A DNA stretch of 64,000 nucleotides, from positions 186,001-250,000 of the IMG/VR virus record IMGVR_UViG_3300029984_000001; one strand, written 5' to 3'. This document shows positions 1 to 63,389 of this stretch, one piece after another (within the stretch, counting starts at the first letter, position 1; every line of letters begins with the position of its first letter). The notes beneath the pieces are model-generated. The model was not told the origin of the DNA and did not search any database. It saw nothing but the letters and a program-made list of their open reading frames with translations. A program made the translations under genes and the position numbers.

Positions 1-674
1 GGTTTATACATCTTACGACCTCCAGTTCTTAGATCTTCAAATATTTCTTTTTCAAATATTGCTAAATGTTTTAAAAGAGTAATTTGATCGAAGTTCTCTG
101 TGTTTAAGACATCTTCATACATAATTTGTTTTAATCTTTTTTGGGTAAATTTATTAGTGATAGATTTTTGCATTGCTAATCCCTTAATATCGAAATAACC
201 ACCCTTTATTAAATTTCCTTCTTGTATTTCTTGTATAGAAGCATAATTTTTTTTAACACCAGATAACAATATGGTCTTAAATAAGAATTCATTCTTCATA
301 ACAATAAGACATTCTTTTCCTTCTGCCCATGAGTGAGTATTCTTAGTGTATCTTTCCATATAATCATTAACAAAGTGTGTCAAGCAATAAGACATTATAT
401 TTATTATAGAATATCTAACCCCTTCTTGTGGAATAACCTTTAAAGGGTTTATCATCTTCTTCATTTGTATTACTTCATCATCATAGAATGAATAATCCAA
501 TTCATCTTCTACTCTTTCCATAAATTTAATAGGTTTAATAACATCACCAAATTCATCTTCTTTTAGTCTTTCCATGAAATCTATTGGAGTGTGTTTAATC
601 TTTAAATCCAAATCTTTTATCTTTGTAAGAGAGTATTGATAGAATGGATCTAAGCTCAATATTGAACTATCTGT
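1..674 (-). CDS. Family B DNA polymerase, exon 2 (runs off window start)
   Basis: Manual translation from 674 downward is open to base 1: TDSSILSLDPFYQY...MKNEFLFKTILLSGVKKNYASIQE...FDIKGLAMQKS (PolB KKNY and D-IKG motifs). Joined to exon 1 it restores ITD|TDS. Confidence 0.92.
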
Positions 675-1402
675 CGATTTTAGACTATATCATTTACCTA
701 TAACGAAATATATAGGCAACCTTCCACTTCCATTTAAAAAACTCTTATATCCTTATCACGGAACGGTTTTACTTATATAAAATATATAAGCTGTACTCTA
801 CTTGCTTCGTGTATTATTTCTAATACCTTATTTTCAACTAAAGAATTTCGACTTTAGTATATAGCTTTCGATAGTCGTTGAACAAAAATAAAATAACAAT
901 TTTAAAATTTATAATTTTTAGATACATCAATCCATAATATTCTATATTTAATTTTATATAGTAATTGTTTATACTTATTTCTATATCAAACCATTCTTTT
1001 ATTTTTTCTACTAAGATATGTATCTTTATTCATTATATCTCCCGAATTACTTACGAAATAATAATCTTTTACTATTGGTAAATATAATGATATTTGTCTC
1101 CATTCTTCTTGTAAATGTATTTGATCTCTTACCATGAATTGTTTATTCATATTTTCACCTCCTTCTTTGTAAGCTATCTAAAAATAAATTAATTGTTATT
1201 TTATTTCTGATGCTGATTATCCCTTGTTAATAACACTTAGCACCTTTACAGGCTTTTATTTCAGCTTATGTCAGGTTCATATATTGTTTTTACTTTCGTA
1301 ACCATTTCTCTTATAATTATGGTTTATGAACATTTGGGGAACTTCCAGCAATTCAAAAGGTTATTCGACTCTATATTACTATAGAGAAGGGACACAGAGT
1401 TT
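675..1402 (-). mobile_element. Group I self-splicing intron in DNA polymerase (728 nt)
   Basis: Minus strand shows P (AATTGCTGGAA), Q (AATCAGCA), R (GTTCAACGACTA, ~872-883) and S (ATGATATAGTCT, ~682-693) elements. The 5' exon ends in U and the intron ends in G. IGS UCUGU-GUCC pairs with 3' exon ACAGA (P10) and 5' exon GGAU (P1, U-G wobble). Confidence 0.92.
986..1150 (-). pseudogene. Truncated NUMOD4/HNH homing endonuclease remnant inside the DNA polymerase intron
   Basis: RBS GGAGGTG, then MNKQFMVRDQIHLQEEWRQISLYLPIVKDYYFVSNSGDIM...KRMV* (54 aa). EEW..I....Y.VSN.G is a NUMOD4-like start; there is no HNH motif. Confidence 0.7.
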
Positions 1403-5924: not shown

Positions 5925-8045
5925 ATGAAAAGCGAATTTATTGATGACATTATACAAGACTTGAATGACATAGTTTTATACTATGATAACTATTATGTAT
6001 TTGCAGATTTTGCAAAAAATAAACAAATGATATTTGATGTAAGAACACTAAATATCAATAATTATGATGCTCATTATACTGGTATATTGAATCTGATGAA
6101 AGATACAATAGAAACAGAATATATGACAGATTACATGATTACATTAAAATTCGATGAAGATAAGTACTGTAAAATGAGTATACCTGATTTATGGATGAAT
6201 CTTATAATGTGGTATATCATAGTAAAGACAAATAGAGTAATTAAACCTAAATACATATTCTTTGAAGATTGTATCACAAAGAAAAACATTAAAGAGTACA
6301 TAGACAATTATCTTATAGATGAGTATACTACATCTATTGATATTATTGATTTAAATAATATTATTGATGATTGTCTTCATAAACTGTTAGATATTAATGA
6401 ATTTAGTATGTTCCTAGCTAATACTATCAACTTGGAAGACTTCGTAATACTAATGAATGAAGATCCAAGATTTAATGAATGTATACATGCCAATATAGGA
6501 AAAGACGTTCCTTTAGATGAAATAAAGAATGTAGGAATGGATTATACTATGGAAGCTGTAGAAAGAATTAAACAATCTAAACATGGATTGGCTAGTTTCT
6601 TTAGGGCACAAGAAGGAATTAATACGAAACAGTTTAAAGAGTTTGGTATCAATATTGGTACTAAACCAGACGGTATGGGTGGGATATTTCCTACAGTAGT
6701 AAATACAAACTTCTTAATTGGAGGTGTAAATGATTTACTATCATACCACATAGAATCCCATAGTGGGCGTCTTGCTCAAATAATAGTCGAAGATAACGTA
6801 TCCGATTCAGGATATTTTGCTAGACTATTGGGTATCAATAATATAGATTCTTTTAACCACGAAGATCCAAATTATGATTGTGGAACTAGAAATTTCGTAC
6901 CAGTTACTATAACTAGAAAGAATATAAGATTATACAATTCAAGGTTTTATAGAATGACTCCCAATGGTATGGAATATCTATTAAAAGAAACTGATACACA
7001 TTTATTTGACAAGACAATATTTTTACGTTCTCCAATGACATGTCGTTCTCATGTAGAAGGACATGGCATTTGTTATAAGTGTTATGGTCATCTAGCTTAT
7101 ATAGTTAGATTAATCAATGCAGGAAAAATAGCAGCAGAATTAATGTCATCTGAATTAACTCAAAAAATGCTATCTGCTAAGCATTTATTGGAAGCCGCAG
7201 TAAGAGCACTAATATGGAGTACAGGATTTGTTGACTATTTTATAGTCGATTGGAATAATTTGAAATTGAAACCTGATGTTGATTTTACTAATTGTAAACT
7301 TGTTATTGCAGCTAATACTATATGGATAGATTCTGAAGAAGAAGATGAAATGAGTGGGGAAATGAGAGAATATATTCCTAATTTCCATATTCAACTATCA
7401 GATGGTAATAGAATACAAATAAAAACTGCTGATTGTAATGACTTGTTTTTAACAGCTGATTTAAATAACTCTATAAGAGAATATGGAATACCTGGAGATA
7501 ATCATGAAATATTGATAGATCTAGATAAACTTAAAGGTTTACCTTTGTTCTCTGTAGATAATATTAATAACGATCTAAATGATACGTTAAATAAAATCAG
7601 AAAAACTATCAACCATAAAGATACAACAGAAGGTTTCAATATGCAACAAATTCTGGAAACATTACTGCATAATTTAGGAGAAGGAGGAATGCATTTATCA
7701 TCCGTACATGCAGAAACAATTATATCTAATCAAATCAGAAGTACAGATTTTATATTAGATAGACCCGATTGGAGTGTTCCTAATCAGAAATATAGAATAC
7801 TTGCACTTAAAACAGCTTTAACAAACCATCCTTCAATTAGTGTTACTATGGCATTTGAAGGTATTAAGGCTGCATTATACAATCCATTAACTTTTAAGAA
7901 GAATAAACCTAGTTTCTTAGATTTATTCTTTGTAGTAAAACCACAAGAATACCTTTCAGATAAAACAAAAGTTACTAAAACAACTTTTGGTGATAAAGAT
8001 TCGACTGGGAAAACGATATTTATGAAACGTGATAAATTAGAATAA
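5925..8045 (+). CDS. Multisubunit RNA polymerase beta' C-terminal subunit (probably non-virion RNAP)
   Basis: DSGYFARLL (bridge helix), LRSPMTC...GICYKCYG (Zn site) and GKIAAELMSSELTQKMLSAKH (trigger loop). The ~700 aa size and early-type promoter favour the non-virion enzyme. Confidence 0.92.
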   Translation: MKSEFIDDIIQDLNDIVLYYDNYYVFADFAKNKQMIFDVRTLNINNYDAHYTGILNLMKDTIETEYMTDYMITLKFDEDKYCKMSIPDLWMNLIMWYIIVKTNRVIKPKYIFFEDCITKKNIKEYIDNYLIDEYTTSIDIIDLNNIIDDCLHKLLDINEFSMFLANTINLEDFVILMNEDPRFNECIHANIGKDVPLDEIKNVGMDYTMEAVERIKQSKHGLASFFRAQEGINTKQFKEFGINIGTKPDGMGGIFPTVVNTNFLIGGVNDLLSYHIESHSGRLAQIIVEDNVSDSGYFARLLGINNIDSFNHEDPNYDCGTRNFVPVTITRKNIRLYNSRFYRMTPNGMEYLLKETDTHLFDKTIFLRSPMTCRSHVEGHGICYKCYGHLAYIVRLINAGKIAAELMSSELTQKMLSAKHLLEAAVRALIWSTGFVDYFIVDWNNLKLKPDVDFTNCKLVIAANTIWIDSEEEDEMSGEMREYIPNFHIQLSDGNRIQIKTADCNDLFLTADLNNSIREYGIPGDNHEILIDLDKLKGLPLFSVDNINNDLNDTLNKIRKTINHKDTTEGFNMQQILETLLHNLGEGGMHLSSVHAETIISNQIRSTDFILDRPDWSVPNQKYRILALKTALTNHPSISVTMAFEGIKAALYNPLTFKKNKPSFLDLFFVVKPQEYLSDKTKVTKTTFGDKDSTGKTIFMKRDKLE

Positions 8046-36000: not shown

Positions 36001-36227
36001 AAAATATAGAGCACATTAGTGCTCTATTATTTTATCTTATAAATGTGTATTGTCATCGTACATTAATAGTTATCCCCCTTTCGTTTATTTGGATAACATT
36101 AATGTTTAGTGTTTACCATATACTTCAACTCCTTTATAATATAATCATTTAGTGTTAAATTAAGATGATTATTATTGTTTATTCATAATTATAATATATA
36201 ATTATAAATCGGGAGTTTTACAAAATC

Positions 36228-36434
36228 TTAATAAAATTCTATAGGAGTTAATTTCTTTTGTGTTTGTGGGAGTATTAAAGTAAAATTATATAATGCTTGT
36301 ACTGTTTCATTACTAGATACATGAACATTCTTTCCACCTAAATCTATATAGTATCTTTTAGAATTTATATATTCATCTAATTCTTTATTAGATTCAATTG
36401 TATAAGCTACTTTAGCGGTTAACTGATCACCATC
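36228..36434 (-). CDS. RNA polymerase beta' N-terminal subunit, exon 2
   Basis: Begins GAT GGT GAT CAG (DGDQ), completing the catalytic DYDGD after splicing; 68 aa. Confidence 0.92.
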   Translation of the reverse strand, partial: DGDQLTAKVAYTIESNKELDEYINSKRYYIDLGGKNVHVSSNETVQALYNFTLILPQTQKKLTPIEFY

Positions 36435-37665
36435 CACACATTAACCTATTGTGAACGCAACTTCACCAGAAGATTTTCATCTTCCCAGACTATATCATCC
36501 CTTATGGGCTACCTCTTTCGAATCTATCATAAGCTTATAGATCCTACTCTACTCAATATTAAAGTTATATTTATTTGATATTTCGGTATGAGATTCTTTT
36601 CTTTTTATCCTACCAATTATACTTCTTTGTTGTTGAAATTCCCCTGGTAGTTTCAATTCATCTATAATTGCTCTAGTTGAATATCCTTTAGATAATAATT
36701 TACAAATGTTTTCTACATATGGAAAGAAATCTATTTGAGGTTTCTTCTCTTTAAATTTATATAATGTGGATATATGTTTCCATCTTTTACCTTTAATAAT
36801 ATGACTTACATTAAATCTATTATTTTCAGTATTTTCCATATTAGATTTTATTAAAGCATTTCCATATGAATCTCCATCTTGAACATATTTGCAAATACTA
36901 TGTACTTGTTCTTCTGTCCATTTACTCATACCATTATTTTCTCCATAAGTATTTTCTCCAGTACCCCAACCTCCATCTTCCTTGACAAATCTTGATTCAA
37001 CATGTTTAGAAAATTCTCTATCTGTATCTTTATTTTGAAACTCATGTTCAAGATTTTCTAGTTGAGTACACCATTCTAAATTACCATAGAATGCATCTGA
37101 TCTACATAAATTTTTATGGTTTACTTGAGTTTTATTTATTGGGTCTGGATTAAATACATACATGGTAGCAACCAAAATATGTACAAAGAAAGATTTTCTA
37201 GTAGAATCATTTAATTGTAAAGATACTGATAAATATCCATTAGATAGTGCTACCGATAATAAATTACCTTCTATATTTAAAAATCTACCATAATTACTTA
37301 TCTTATAACCTGTTCTGATATTATAACATTGTAAATCTACCCATTGTTCTATAGGATTAGGATATTCTATTAATGGGTTTATACCTTGTGAGAAATCGTC
37401 TCTTATCATAAAACTTTTCATTTATTCTCATCTCCTTTCGTGTATATAATATATAACTTTAATATCTTTTGATAGTCGTTGAACGTTCCCTATACATCAT
37501 CATATAAGGCTTCGATGCTGATTACCCAATTATTAATCATTCTCAAGCATTCACGCTTATAGTTTCCCATTACGTTGTAGCTGATTAACTTACAAGGGCG
37601 TTCCAGCAGTTAAGGTAGTTTTTGTTTCGACGCACATCGTCAAGAAGACTACAATGGTGAGGTTT
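36435..37665 (-). mobile_element. Group I intron in RNAP beta' catalytic motif (1231 nt)
   Basis: P1: exon GGAGACUAU pairs with intron GUAGUCUUC, with U-G at the splice site. P (AACTGCTGGAA), Q (AATCAGCA), R (GTTCAACGACTA) and S (GATGATATAGTCT) elements present; terminal G at 36435. Confidence 0.95.
36549..37421 (-). CDS. Intron-encoded NUMOD4/HNH homing endonuclease
   Basis: EQWVDL...YKISNYGRF, GYLSVSL, FFVHILVA...QVNHKNLCRSDAFYGNLEWCTQLENLEH; GENNGMSKWTEEQV; RBS AAAGGAG. Confidence 0.92.
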   Translation of the reverse strand: MKSFMIRDDFSQGINPLIEYPNPIEQWVDLQCYNIRTGYKISNYGRFLNIEGNLLSVALSNGYLSVSLQLNDSTRKSFFVHILVATMYVFNPDPINKTQVNHKNLCRSDAFYGNLEWCTQLENLEHEFQNKDTDREFSKHVESRFVKEDGGWGTGENTYGENNGMSKWTEEQVHSICKYVQDGDSYGNALIKSNMENTENNRFNVSHIIKGKRWKHISTLYKFKEKKPQIDFFPYVENICKLLSKGYSTRAIIDELKLPGEFQQQRSIIGRIKRKESHTEISNKYNFNIE

Positions 37666-39093
37666 ATAGTCTCCTTCTACTTTTTTGAGATGCAAATTAC
37701 TGATGTTTAAAGTATCTCTAAATCTAGATGATGTATTAGTACCTATATCTTCCTCTCTTATTTTTGGATAATAAGGATAGAATTCATTATTTATATAAAT
37801 ACCTTCTGTTTCTACTGTAGATGAAATTCTAATTTTATTTGGGAATTGACCGAAATAAGTATTCATAGGATATCTTGTTAATAATACATGTTTATCTTTA
37901 GACATTTCTACAGCAGCCATATAAAAAATATCACACCAACATAATCTTCTATGATAAATAGATGATACATCTTCTTTATCCATTTCATCTTTAGTATCTG
38001 TATGAGGAGCATTGTTACCTTTAAAGTACATATATCTCATTTCACCTGTAGTTAATTCTACTTCTATAGGAATGAATCTATTTGAATATCCATGTATAAA
38101 TCTTTTCATTTGTTTTTTAATTACATCATCTGAAAATTGCACATAAGGATTCTTTACTTGTACTACTTTAGGATTACCCTTATCATCATATAATACTTTT
38201 TCATTAGTACCACCGAATTCATTTTCAAAGAATCTTCTACACCAGAATAATATATACGGATATAGATTTGCTAAGGCTGATGCTAACGGTAAAGCACAAT
38301 GTCTTAAATCAACCATTAAATCATCTACTGATTCTACATTTAATTCAGGAGCCGATATAACTAATCTAGAAGAATAATCTGAAGTCTTTGCCATAACTGT
38401 TCTTTTTATGATTCCATATTTCTTTCCTAGATTTGGTTCTTGAGTAAACCAATCATATACTCTAACTAATAATTCCTGTATTCTTCCTATAGTAGCAGAT
38501 GTCATTGAAAATCCAAAATCATCGGATTCTCTTAATGCAGCTGAGGCTATAATTAAAGAATTATATATCTTATTAATTTCTCCTACTCCTAAAGTTTTAT
38601 TTCCAGTATTTACATCTCTATAGTATGCAGGTATTACTATATACTTATCTAAAAATAATGTATTATTCTTTTTATTTCTATTTATAAAATCTATATTTAT
38701 ATCTCTTTTGAGAGAGTCTGTAGATTTTATTTTTATCTTATCTATATTATTTTTTAAGAAGTCTACCCCATTTTCTCCATTCTCATCTTCTTCTAATTGT
38801 CCTTGAGAATTAATCTTAAAATTCTTAGTCCCATGAACACATTCTTTTATTTTTCTATCCATTCTACACCATATTTTATATGATAATGGATCTATGAAAT
38901 TTTTGTGTAGGTCAATATAGGCAAATATATTGGCTCTTTGATCTTTAGATAAACCAAAAACTTCATTAGATAATAAACCGTCTGATGTAGGTACTCCATT
39001 ACTAAAAAAATATATAGGATTGGTAATCTGTTTTAAATTATTCTCTTTAATTAATCGACTAGGACTTAATGTCTCTAACTCTAAATGTTTCAT
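37666..39093 (-). CDS. RNA polymerase beta' N-terminal subunit, exon 1 (probably virion RNAP)
   Basis: DGLLSNEVFG, VIPAYYRD, KTSDYSSRLVISAP, LLTRYP and ...VEGDY. Spliced product is 544 aa. It lies among structural genes. Confidence 0.92.
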
Positions 39094-62300: not shown

Positions 62301-63389
62301 TTATATCTCTCCTCTCTTTATTTTTTGTACTTGAGCAATTGCTTTATAGCAAACACTTCTAGAAGATTTATAACATTCTTTAAATGCATCTAATTTAGCA
62401 CTAAAAGATATAGAATGTATAGCACTCATTTCTGATATTTGATCTGTCTTGGCTTTTACAAATAGATTTAAATAATTTAGAGTCTCAGAATCAACACTAT
62501 AAGCTGCGACATTATTAGCACCTGATACTTTATTATCAAAGTTCACACTAACTTTATTACCACCATCTTTTTTATCAACTTTTAATAAACTAGATACATA
62601 ATTCTTTATATTAGTATATTGAATCTCAATTTGTTTCTTAGTATCTTCTACACTTTTCAAAGCAGTTTTATAATCTTTTACAAATAAATAAGCAGTATTT
62701 ACATTATCAGATTTAATTGTAATATCTTCTTTAGTGTCTTCATTATTTCTAAATACTTTAAATAAAGAATCTTTATAATCCTCTTTAGAAATTTTCTCTC
62801 CAGTTCTTCCAATTACTGAAGCTCTTAGAGAATCATAATAATCTCCATCTAATTTATTTTTAAATGTTTCATAGTTATTCTTAGCAGCATCTGATTTCTC
62901 TCTATTAGTTTTATTATCATCCCAAGTACCAGAATCTAATTCTATAAAACCTTCTTGGAAATTTGCTTGAGCATCTATAATAGGAATATTATCTTTAAAA
63001 GTATAAGTATAATCATTTATATCAAACTCACAAGAATCATCAAATTTACCTAATAGATCAGCATGTTTAATTAAATACTTATCAGATCTGATTGCACCAT
63101 TTATAGCTCTAACAAATCTATCCCATAAGTTTTTAATAAATGATAAGAATTTAGATATAATACTAACTACCTTGGAAGTAAAATCAGAGAACCCTTCATT
63201 AATAGCAACAACATCTGATCCTGATTCTAATAGAGATCTATATAATTGTTTATTTACTTCTATCATATTTCTTTCTGATTCTAATACATAATTTAATGTA
63301 GTTGCAAAGAAATTTTCTTCTATACCACTTGTAGTAGATAAATCATTAGAATTGGTTTCATTAAGACTTAAACACTTTATATCAAACAT
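62301..63389 (-). CDS. Putative internal head protein, paralog family C
   Basis: LNET/VLES/LLES/INEG; SIISKFLSFIKNLWDRF; VFRNNED. Confidence 0.6.
   Translation of the reverse strand: MFDIKCLSLNETNSNDLSTTSGIEENFFATTLNYVLESERNMIEVNKQLYRSLLESGSDVVAINEGFSDFTSKVVSIISKFLSFIKNLWDRFVRAINGAIRSDKYLIKHADLLGKFDDSCEFDINDYTYTFKDNIPIIDAQANFQEGFIELDSGTWDDNKTNREKSDAAKNNYETFKNKLDGDYYDSLRASVIGRTGEKISKEDYKDSLFKVFRNNEDTKEDITIKSDNVNTAYLFVKDYKTALKSVEDTKKQIEIQYTNIKNYVSSLLKVDKKDGGNKVSVNFDNKVSGANNVAAYSVDSETLNYLNLFVKAKTDQISEMSAIHSISFSAKLDAFKECYKSSRSVCYKAIAQVQKIKRGEI

What the first reader, a model, noticed from the sequence alone, without database searches (positions are those of the whole stretch)
36435..37665. Group I intron inside the RNAP DYDGD active site with an intact HNH nuclease under its own early-type promoter
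Splicing gives GGA GAC TAT|GAT GGT GAT CAG = GDYDGDQ, with a 9-bp P1 ending in U-G at the splice site. The HNH ORF sits between R and S. It is preceded inside the intron by TTATATATTATATAC (~37442-37456, minus), the window's early motif, and by an RBS, so the nuclease may be expressed early while its probably late host gene is not. Introns in jumbo-phage RNAP genes are known (AR9; phiPA3, whose intron nuclease interferes with co-infecting relatives). Inference: this nuclease could act as a phage-versus-phage weapon against intron-less RNAP alleles.
Basis: partly seen in the sequence, partly recalled or inferred. Interest (0 to 1): 0.6.

Follow-up and report, generated by a model that had tools for sequence, protein, structure and literature searches.

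The report
Mobile intron in phage RNA polymerase
A self-splicing group I intron carrying an HNH homing nuclease interrupts the catalytic-site codons of a giant phage's virion RNA polymerase gene; this arrangement, including a possible early promoter inside the intron, is already known from phages AR9 and PhiPA3.

Summary
On the minus strand, exon 1 (39093-37666) and exon 2 (36434-36228) align end to end with uninterrupted AR9-type virion RNAP beta'-N proteins, meeting at GDY|DGD. The 1231-nt insert has a group I core (Rfam partial hit), an 11-bp P1 with U.G at the splice site, an 8-bp P10, P3/P7/P8/P9 and a terminal G. P1, P10, P2, P4 and P5 covary across seven related introns. Relatives carry this site empty, filled by an ORF-less copy, or filled by introns with homologous HNH genes in other loops. 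AR9 and two other phages have introns 3 and 6 nt downstream.

The 290-aa ORF is an intact I-HmuI-like HNH nuclease.

The "early motif" is real. TATATATTAT-N6-G occurs 30 times in the 263.6-kb genome, 27 of them intergenic, and it matches AR9's virion-RNAP early promoter. The intron copy is the weakest one: it has C where all 26 other intergenic copies have T at -1. It also overlaps a conserved ribozyme hairpin region. Even so, a motif sits upstream of the nuclease gene in 4 of 6 such introns, whichever loop holds the gene, and in 0 of 5 ORF-less or early-gene introns.

Verdict: a new member of a known kind. Promoter activity and phage-versus-phage use remain untested.

The parts
37666..39093 (-). 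Exon 1 of the virion RNAP beta'-N gene (476 codons), ending in GDY
   Evidence: phrog_2986, E 1e-59, profile positions 8-485. Aligns with Goe21 residues 1-449, which end in GGDY. The best AR9 hit is g145, annotated as a virion RNAP subunit.
36435..37665 (-). Group I intron, 1231 nt, with terminal G at 36435
   Evidence: Rfam RF00028 local hit; P1, P10 and the terminal G; an ORF-less homologue at the same site in L007; 20 covarying pairs.
36228..36434 (-). Exon 2 (68 codons plus stop), starting with DGDQ
   Evidence: Aligns with Goe21 from residue 450, DGD; phrog_2986 profile positions 486-535.
37642..37660 (-). Internal guide region: P10 strand at 37660-37653 and P1 3' strand at 37652-37642
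   Evidence: 11-bp P1 with exon bases 37676-37666, and 8-bp P10 with exon-2 bases 36434-36427. Both strands change together with exon wobble bases in L007, L022, L005, L027 and L028.
37473..37608 (-). Ribozyme core: P4, P5, P6, J6/7 and the P7 5' strand (R element at 37482-37472)
   Evidence: RF00028 model positions 60-148, 33.6 bits, E 1.9e-6; this is below the gathering score of 50.
37439..37455 (-). Early-promoter-like motif: decamer at 37455-37446, 6-nt spacer, predicted start G at 37439
   Evidence: One of 30 genome copies of TATATATTAT-N6-G. It matches the AR9 early consensus. It scores 14.6 bits against a training minimum of 18.1, and has C rather than T at -1.
37432..37438 (-). Ribosome-binding site AAAGGAG, 10 nt before the ATG
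   Evidence: Read from the sequence. AAGGAG is the most enriched upstream hexamer in the genome.
36549..37421 (-). HNH homing endonuclease gene, 290 aa, I-HmuI-like
   Evidence: phrog_59 E 8e-29. NUMOD4 and HNH_3 match below the Pfam cut-offs. Matches 1U3E by sequence at E 0.004 and by fold at E 2.6e-5. H102, N114 and N122 align with the I-HmuI catalytic residues.
36467..36554 (-). 3' part of the ribozyme: a hairpin, P3' (36515-36509), P8 (36508-36499), P7' (36493-36488) and P9
   Evidence: 78% identical to the L007 intron from 36554 onward. P3, P8 and P9 appear in the fold of the ORF-deleted intron. P7 was paired by eye.
36184..36200 (-). A second, strong early-promoter motif just after the exon 2 stop codon (31 bits)
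   Evidence: An early motif directly after exon 2 also occurs in L005, L027, L029 and L030.

Best explanation
This is a mobile group I intron. It has extra helices between P7 and P3', which is typical of phage subgroup IA. It is inserted between the Tyr and Asp codons of the catalytic DYDGD loop of the virion RNA polymerase beta'-N subunit gene of a 263.6-kb, 25.8% GC, AR9-like jumbo phage from peat. After transcription of the presumably late host gene, the RNA should fold so that P1 (with its U.G pair) and P10 align the exons, and then splice itself out to restore GDYDGDQ. Just after the P7.2 position the intron carries an intact I-HmuI-like HNH nuclease gene with its own ribosome-binding site. 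That gene probably has its own promoter for the injected virion polymerase, TATATATTAT-N6-G with a predicted start at 37439. If so, the nuclease could be made early, independently of its host gene. It would then nick intron-less alleles of the same gene in co-infecting relatives, driving homing and possibly excluding them. Shown here: the intron anatomy, the exact junction, covariation, presence/absence among relatives, the nuclease fold and motif, and the genome-wide promoter motif. Inferred: splicing itself, promoter activity, late timing of the host gene, and the nuclease target.
For: The exons abut exactly on intron-less homologues. There is a group I core hit. P1, P10 and the terminal G are present, and the guide sequences track exon wobble changes. 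Of 44 consensus pairs, 20 show compensatory changes. L007 has an ORF-less homologue at the same site. Homologous HNH genes sit in the same gene's intron in five other phages. The nuclease matches I-HmuI by sequence and by fold and keeps H, N, N. The motif occurs 30 times against 4.6 expected, 27 copies intergenic and mostly followed by a ribosome-binding site and ATG, and it equals the AR9 early consensus AAATATATATTAT-N6-G. A motif of at least 14.6 bits lies upstream of the HNH gene in 4 of 6 such introns, in whichever loop holds the gene, and in 0 of 5 ORF-less or early-gene introns. In AR9, the HNH gene g190 and its early promoter lie inside an intron of late vRNAP gene g189, and g190 is expressed at 5 min.
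Against: No RNA data exist for this phage, so neither splicing nor a transcription start has been seen. The Rfam score is below the gathering threshold, because the ORF splits the core. The promoter copy has C at -1 where the other 26 sites all have T. Its upstream flank is imperfect, and its score (14.6 bits) is below the weakest training site (18.1). The AR9 authors report that a single deviation can silence an early promoter. The motif can be derived from the family's P7.2 hairpin by a 6-nt loop deletion, so it may be partly inherited structure. L027 and L028 have the nuclease gene without any such motif. The AR9 orthologous gene's own intron ORFs use late promoters.
Confidence: 0.6

Rival explanations
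1. The intron and nuclease are as described, but the promoter-like motif is only a remodelled AT-rich ribozyme hairpin (P7.2) and is not an active promoter. The nuclease would then be made late, from the unspliced host transcript or from an unrecognised late promoter, as for AR9 g146 and g147.
For: The motif overlaps conserved intron sequence. The own-genome introns at 65.3 and 103.5 kb have 8-9 of the 10 decamer bases in a hairpin there, and a 6-nt deletion reproduces the window's sequence. The copy has C at the otherwise invariant T-1 and the lowest score of all sites. AR9 vRNAP is intolerant of some single changes. AR9 g146 and g147 in the orthologous gene have late promoters. L027 and L028 lack the motif.
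Against: The decamer is perfect and the spacing to the G is exact. L030 has the same element with a perfect upstream TTATAAT. L005 places a 22.8-bit motif in a different loop, again upstream of its nuclease gene. ORF-less introns and early-gene introns score -10 to 4.7 bits. Only about 2% of random 250-nt segments reach 14 bits, and true promoter sites by themselves would account for about 1.3%.
Confidence: 0.35
2. This is not an intron. The beta'-N subunit would be split into two separately translated genes with a free-standing HNH gene between them.
For: Jumbo-phage RNAP subunits are naturally split. Gene callers annotate the pieces as separate ORFs.
Against: The break falls inside the catalytic DYDGD loop. 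Exon 2 has only a GTG with no ribosome-binding site. The group I core, P1, P10, the terminal G and covariation are all present. Relatives have the same gene uninterrupted.
Confidence: 0.02

Closest known systems
Bacillus phage AR9 g145 (virion RNAP beta'-N), intron 2 with homing endonuclease g146
   Same: Orthologous gene (33% aa identity). It has a group I intron with a similar core within the same DYDGD codons, and a homing nuclease inside the intron.
   Different: AR9's intron sits 3 nt downstream (D|G rather than Y|D). Its ORF is an unrelated 'Hef-like' nuclease near the 5' end of the intron, and that ORF has a late promoter (AACA-N6-TA). AR9 also has a second intron at about residue 390 that is absent here.
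AR9 g190 (HNH-AP2 nuclease) inside the intron of late vRNAP beta-N gene g189
   Same: An HNH gene with its own virion-RNAP early promoter lies inside an intron of a late virion-RNAP subunit gene. Early expression was shown by RNA-seq and 5'-end mapping (PMC5312081).
   Different: It is a different subunit gene and a different HNH architecture. The AR9 promoter starts with A. Here there are no expression data, and the motif deviates at -1.
PhiPA3 gp210 intron in a vRNAP gene (PMC11620839)
   Same: An I-HmuI-like HNH nickase encoded in a group I intron at conserved aspartate codons of a virion RNAP gene. It nicks the intron-less allele of a co-infecting phage and lowers that phage's fitness.
   Different: It belongs to a nucleus-forming Pseudomonas phage and an unrelated lineage. 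The paper aligns the target with RpoB homologues. Activity there is experimentally shown; here it is only inferred.
I-HmuI / I-HmuII of Bacillus phages SPO1 and SP82 (PDB 1U3E)
   Same: The only solved relative of the nuclease by sequence and by fold. The H, N, N catalytic positions are conserved. From background knowledge, these enzymes are nickases that favour the heterologous phage's DNA.
   Different: They target a DNA polymerase gene. Identity over the HNH domain is about 26%. This protein is longer (290 against 174 aa), has two extra helical domains, and has Asn in place of I-HmuI Asp74.

Membership tests
Group I self-splicing intron (Rfam RF00028) | Conserved catalytic core (P3-P8, including P4/P6 and the P7 guanosine site) | tested here: inconclusive
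   P4-P6 plus the P7 5' strand match at 33.6 bits, E 1.9e-6, which is below the gathering score of 50 because the ORF splits the model. P3, P8 and P9 appear in the ORF-deleted fold. P7 was paired by eye.
Group I self-splicing intron (Rfam RF00028) | P1 helix between the 5' exon and the internal guide, with a U.G pair at the splice site; P10 with the 3' exon; terminal G | tested here: met
   11-bp P1 ending in U.G, 8-bp P10, and G at 36435. The guide sequences covary with exon changes in relatives.
Group I self-splicing intron (Rfam RF00028) | Removing the insert restores a conserved reading frame | tested here: met
   Exon 1 ends at Goe21 residue 449 and exon 2 begins at residue 450. 11 relatives are uninterrupted at this site.
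Group I self-splicing intron (Rfam RF00028) | Self-splicing of the RNA | not testable with these tools
   No RNA runs hold this phage.
I-HmuI-like HNH homing endonuclease (NUMOD4 + HNH_3) | Pfam domain matches above the curated cut-offs | tested here: not met
   NUMOD4 scores 20.2 bits against a cut-off of 23.4. HNH_3 scores 18.6 against 24.8. PHROG 59, 'HNH endonuclease', matches at E 8e-29.
I-HmuI-like HNH homing endonuclease (NUMOD4 + HNH_3) | beta-beta-alpha-metal fold with the catalytic His and the two Asn | tested here: met
   The AlphaFold model has pLDDT 78 overall and above 85 in the HNH domain. The top Foldseek hit is 1U3E, E 2.6e-5. H102, N114 and N122 align with H75, N87 and N96. 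N101 replaces D74, and this Asn is nearly invariant in the subfamily.
I-HmuI-like HNH homing endonuclease (NUMOD4 + HNH_3) | Site-specific nicking near the intron insertion site | not testable with these tools
   This needs a cleavage assay.
AR9-type virion-RNAP early promoter | AT-rich decamer TATATATTAT, 6-nt spacer, G start, upstream of a gene | tested here: met
   Exact decamer and spacing. The predicted start is 18 nt before the ATG and is followed by a ribosome-binding site.
AR9-type virion-RNAP early promoter | Flanking positions that are invariant in this genome (T at -1; TTATAAT upstream) | tested here: not met
   C at -1, where the other 26 sites all have T. The upstream flank is TTAAAGT. 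Score 14.6 bits against a training range of 18.1-29.9.
AR9-type virion-RNAP early promoter | A transcript 5' end early in infection | not testable with these tools
   No expression data.

The most novel reading that the evidence does not exclude
One short sequence may serve two roles. As RNA, it occupies the P7.2 peripheral position of the ribozyme. As DNA, it has been remodelled into a promoter for the injected virion polymerase. That remodelling appears only in introns of the late vRNAP gene whose nuclease gene lies downstream of it. It would give the nuclease an early time window in which to disable intron-less vRNAP alleles of co-infecting relatives before those late genes are needed.
Probability: 0.3. 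Interest if true: 0.55.

Novelty: new member of a known kind. Interest (0 to 1): 0.35.

Why it matters
This extends the AR9 and PhiPA3 pattern of nuclease-bearing introns in virion RNA polymerase genes to an uncultured clade of peat jumbo phages. It shows that about nine bases encoding the catalytic DxDGD loop have been invaded at three or more distinct positions. It also gives a natural comparative series: the site empty, an ORF-less intron, the ORF in three different loops, and the promoter motif present or absent. That series could be used to test whether early, host-gene-independent nuclease expression is selected for. The underlying biology is already established, so the value is incremental.

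Tried and rejected
- Rfam at gathering thresholds over the whole window found nothing. The permissive search found only the 5' half of the core.
- Megablast against phage records found no near relative.
It was replaced by the decamer-N6-G definition.
- Contigs from four peat runs whose word share would fit an intron-less allele were laid on the stretch. Contigs bridge both intron borders (X15 at 37451-37797; X16 at 36142-36612; X17 at 36335-36589). No joint occurs at 36434/37666. The only joint, 36396 to 38672, rests on 24-nt sides in long high-depth contigs and is taken as unrelated.
- No run on record as RNA holds the stretch.
- The AR9 late consensus AACA-N6-TA/G is only about 2-fold enriched upstream of genes. 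It was not seen upstream of the host gene or its operon, so the host gene's promoter remains unidentified.
- Neighbouring operon genes gave no PHROG matches.
- The exons were searched and compared separately by reference.
- An ORF-deleted intron RNA was assembled from references inside a script, only for folding and alignment.

Full report
**What is there.** The window is bases 186001-250000 of a 263,571-bp virus record with 25.8% GC. Its DNA occurs in many peat metagenomes. On the minus strand, an ORF running from 39093 matches PHROG 2986 ("RNA polymerase beta subunit") at profile positions 8-485. A short ORF at 36434-36228 matches positions 486-535 of the same profile. By tblastn the nearest isolates are Listeria phage LPJP1 and the AR9/PBS1 group, at 33-35% identity. 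In AR9 the matching gene is g145, annotated as the virion RNAP beta' N-terminal subunit. Against the uninterrupted protein of Bacillus phage Goe21, exon 1 ends at residue 449 (GGDY) and exon 2 begins at residue 450 (DGD).

**The insert is a group I intron.** Rfam's gathering search is blank. A permissive search places RF00028 model positions 60-148 (P4, P5, P6, J6/7 and the P7 5' strand) at 37608-37473, with 33.6 bits and E 1.9e-6. The ORF splits the core, which explains the sub-threshold score.
- The 5' exon pairs with the internal guide over 11 bp, ending in U.G at the splice site.
- The bases just upstream of the guide pair with the first 8 bases of exon 2 (P10).
- The intron ends in G.
- Folding the intron with the ORF removed recovers P1, P2, P3, P4-P6, P8 and P9. 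P7 (GACUAU/AUAGUC) forms the usual pseudoknot with P3 and was paired by eye.
- Helices between P7 and P3' suggest subgroup IA; this rests on background knowledge.

**Comparative evidence.** Eighteen viral contigs encode relatives of exon 1.
- One (L006) is identical to the window.
- L007 (82% aa identity) has a 441-nt ORF-less intron at the same site. It is 88% and 78% identical to the two halves of this intron.
- Eleven loci are uninterrupted at this site. L011 matches the window's spliced junction at 20 of 21 bases.
- L022/L023 have an ORF-less intron at the same site.
- L019/L020 have an intron 6 nt downstream (G|D), and AR9 has one 3 nt downstream (D|G).
- The guide sequences follow exon wobble changes. 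For example, GGT to GGA in exon 2 of L007 is matched by A to U in P10.
- RNAalifold on seven 5' halves gives 44 pairs, 20 of them with compensatory double changes.

**The nuclease.** The 290-aa ORF (37421-36549) has its own AAAGGAG ribosome-binding site.
- It matches PHROG 59 (HNH endonuclease) at E 8e-29. NUMOD4 and HNH_3 match only below the Pfam cut-offs.
- Its only solved relative is I-HmuI (1U3E), by sequence (E 0.004) and by fold (AlphaFold pLDDT 78; Foldseek E 2.6e-5).
- H102, N114 and N122 align with I-HmuI H75, N87 and N96. N101 replaces D74, but this Asn is nearly invariant in the subfamily.
- Its closest homologues (37-48% identity) all lie in introns of the same gene in other metagenomic phages, in different loops. 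The ORF is in L6 in L005, L027 and L028; between P3' and P7' in L030; and just after the P7.2 position here.

**The promoter question.** TATATATTAT-N6-G occurs 30 times in the genome, against 4.6 in first-order Markov simulations. 27 copies are intergenic, and most are followed by a ribosome-binding site and ATG. The motif equals the AR9 virion-RNAP early consensus AAATATATATTAT-N6-G (PMC5312081). The intron copy (37455-37439) has the exact decamer and spacing.

Three points count against an active promoter:
- It has C at -1, where all 26 other intergenic copies have T. It scores 14.6 bits, against 18.1-29.9 for those copies. The AR9 authors report that one deviation can silence such a promoter.
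- It overlaps conserved intron sequence. The genome's other introns carry an AT hairpin at this position, and deleting six loop bases from that hairpin reproduces the window's sequence.
- L027 and L028 carry the nuclease gene with no such motif.

Three points count for it:
- L030 carries the same element, with a perfect upstream flank, ahead of its nuclease gene.
- L005 has a 22.8-bit motif in a different loop, again ahead of its gene, and L029 has a near-match.
- ORF-less introns, and this genome's own introns in the nvRNAP beta'-N, topoisomerase II and DNA polymerase genes, score only -10 to 4.7 bits. That is 4 of 6 against 0 of 5.

In AR9, the HNH gene g190 and its early promoter sit inside an intron of late vRNAP gene g189, and g190 is expressed at 5 min. 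By contrast, g146 and g147, inside g145, use late promoters. I put promoter activity at a little over one half.

**Timing and function.** Late expression of the host gene is inferred from AR9 g145, which has zero reads at 5 min. The gene's five-gene minus-strand operon also has no well-scoring early motif. The only other copy on that strand is a poor one inside exon 1, at 38256. Nicking of intron-less alleles and interference with co-infecting phages are analogies to PhiPA3 gp210 (PMC11620839) and, from background knowledge, to I-HmuI. Nothing here tests them.

**Reads.** No RNA runs hold this phage. Contigs from four peat runs bridge both intron borders, and none shows an intron-less allele.

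**Verdict.** The anatomy is confirmed. It is a new member of a known kind, with a modestly interesting overlap between promoter and ribozyme sequence and a hotspot of insertion sites.

Noticed in passing
window 36184-36200 (-) to about 36003: A strong early-promoter motif (31 bits) lies directly after the exon 2 stop codon. It precedes a unit of about 170 nt with two tiny ORFs (6 and 8 codons), each with a good ribosome-binding site, and ends at a hairpin followed by a T run. An early motif right after exon 2 is also present in L005, L027, L029 and L030. This may be a conserved early small RNA or micropeptide unit.
   Followed up: partly
window 660-1378 (-): A second group I intron of the same family splits a DNA polymerase gene (exons about 2464-1379 and 659-3; phrog_2927). 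It carries only a 54-codon remnant of an HNH gene (1150-986) and has no early motif.
   Followed up: partly
G000 63085-65918 (L024) and 101078-104654 (L025): The non-virion RNAP beta'-N paralog is split after LLNRNP, and a topoisomerase II gene is also split. Each intron belongs to the same family and has a paralogous HNH gene (25-32% identity) in L6. An early motif at 62997 precedes the nvRNAP gene. One genome therefore has introns in both RNA polymerases.
   Followed up: partly
L005 5100, L022 6206, L028 4119: In three related introns at the same site, the base before exon 2 (GATGG...) is A, A or T rather than the canonical terminal G. For L005, a 1-nt shift of both splice sites would restore a terminal G but change F to L. 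L022 has no such solution. This is unexplained.
   Followed up: partly
L019/L020 about 6090-6125; L007 5655-5690: ORF-less introns keep short stretches resembling the motif-plus-ribosome-binding-site region or the ORF borders. L007 has ...ATATACACGAAGCGAGTAGAG... where the window has its ORF. This suggests that ORFs have been lost by deletion.
   Followed up: no
window 38240-38256 (-): A copy of TATATATTAT-N6-G lies inside exon 1 coding sequence. Its flanks are poor and it scores below 15 bits, so it is probably a chance match.
   Followed up: no
run X16, window 37794-38866: Contigs about 91-94% identical to exon 1 show that a second strain of this phage is present in the same peat run. They stop short of the intron border, so that strain's intron status is unknown.
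   Followed up: no
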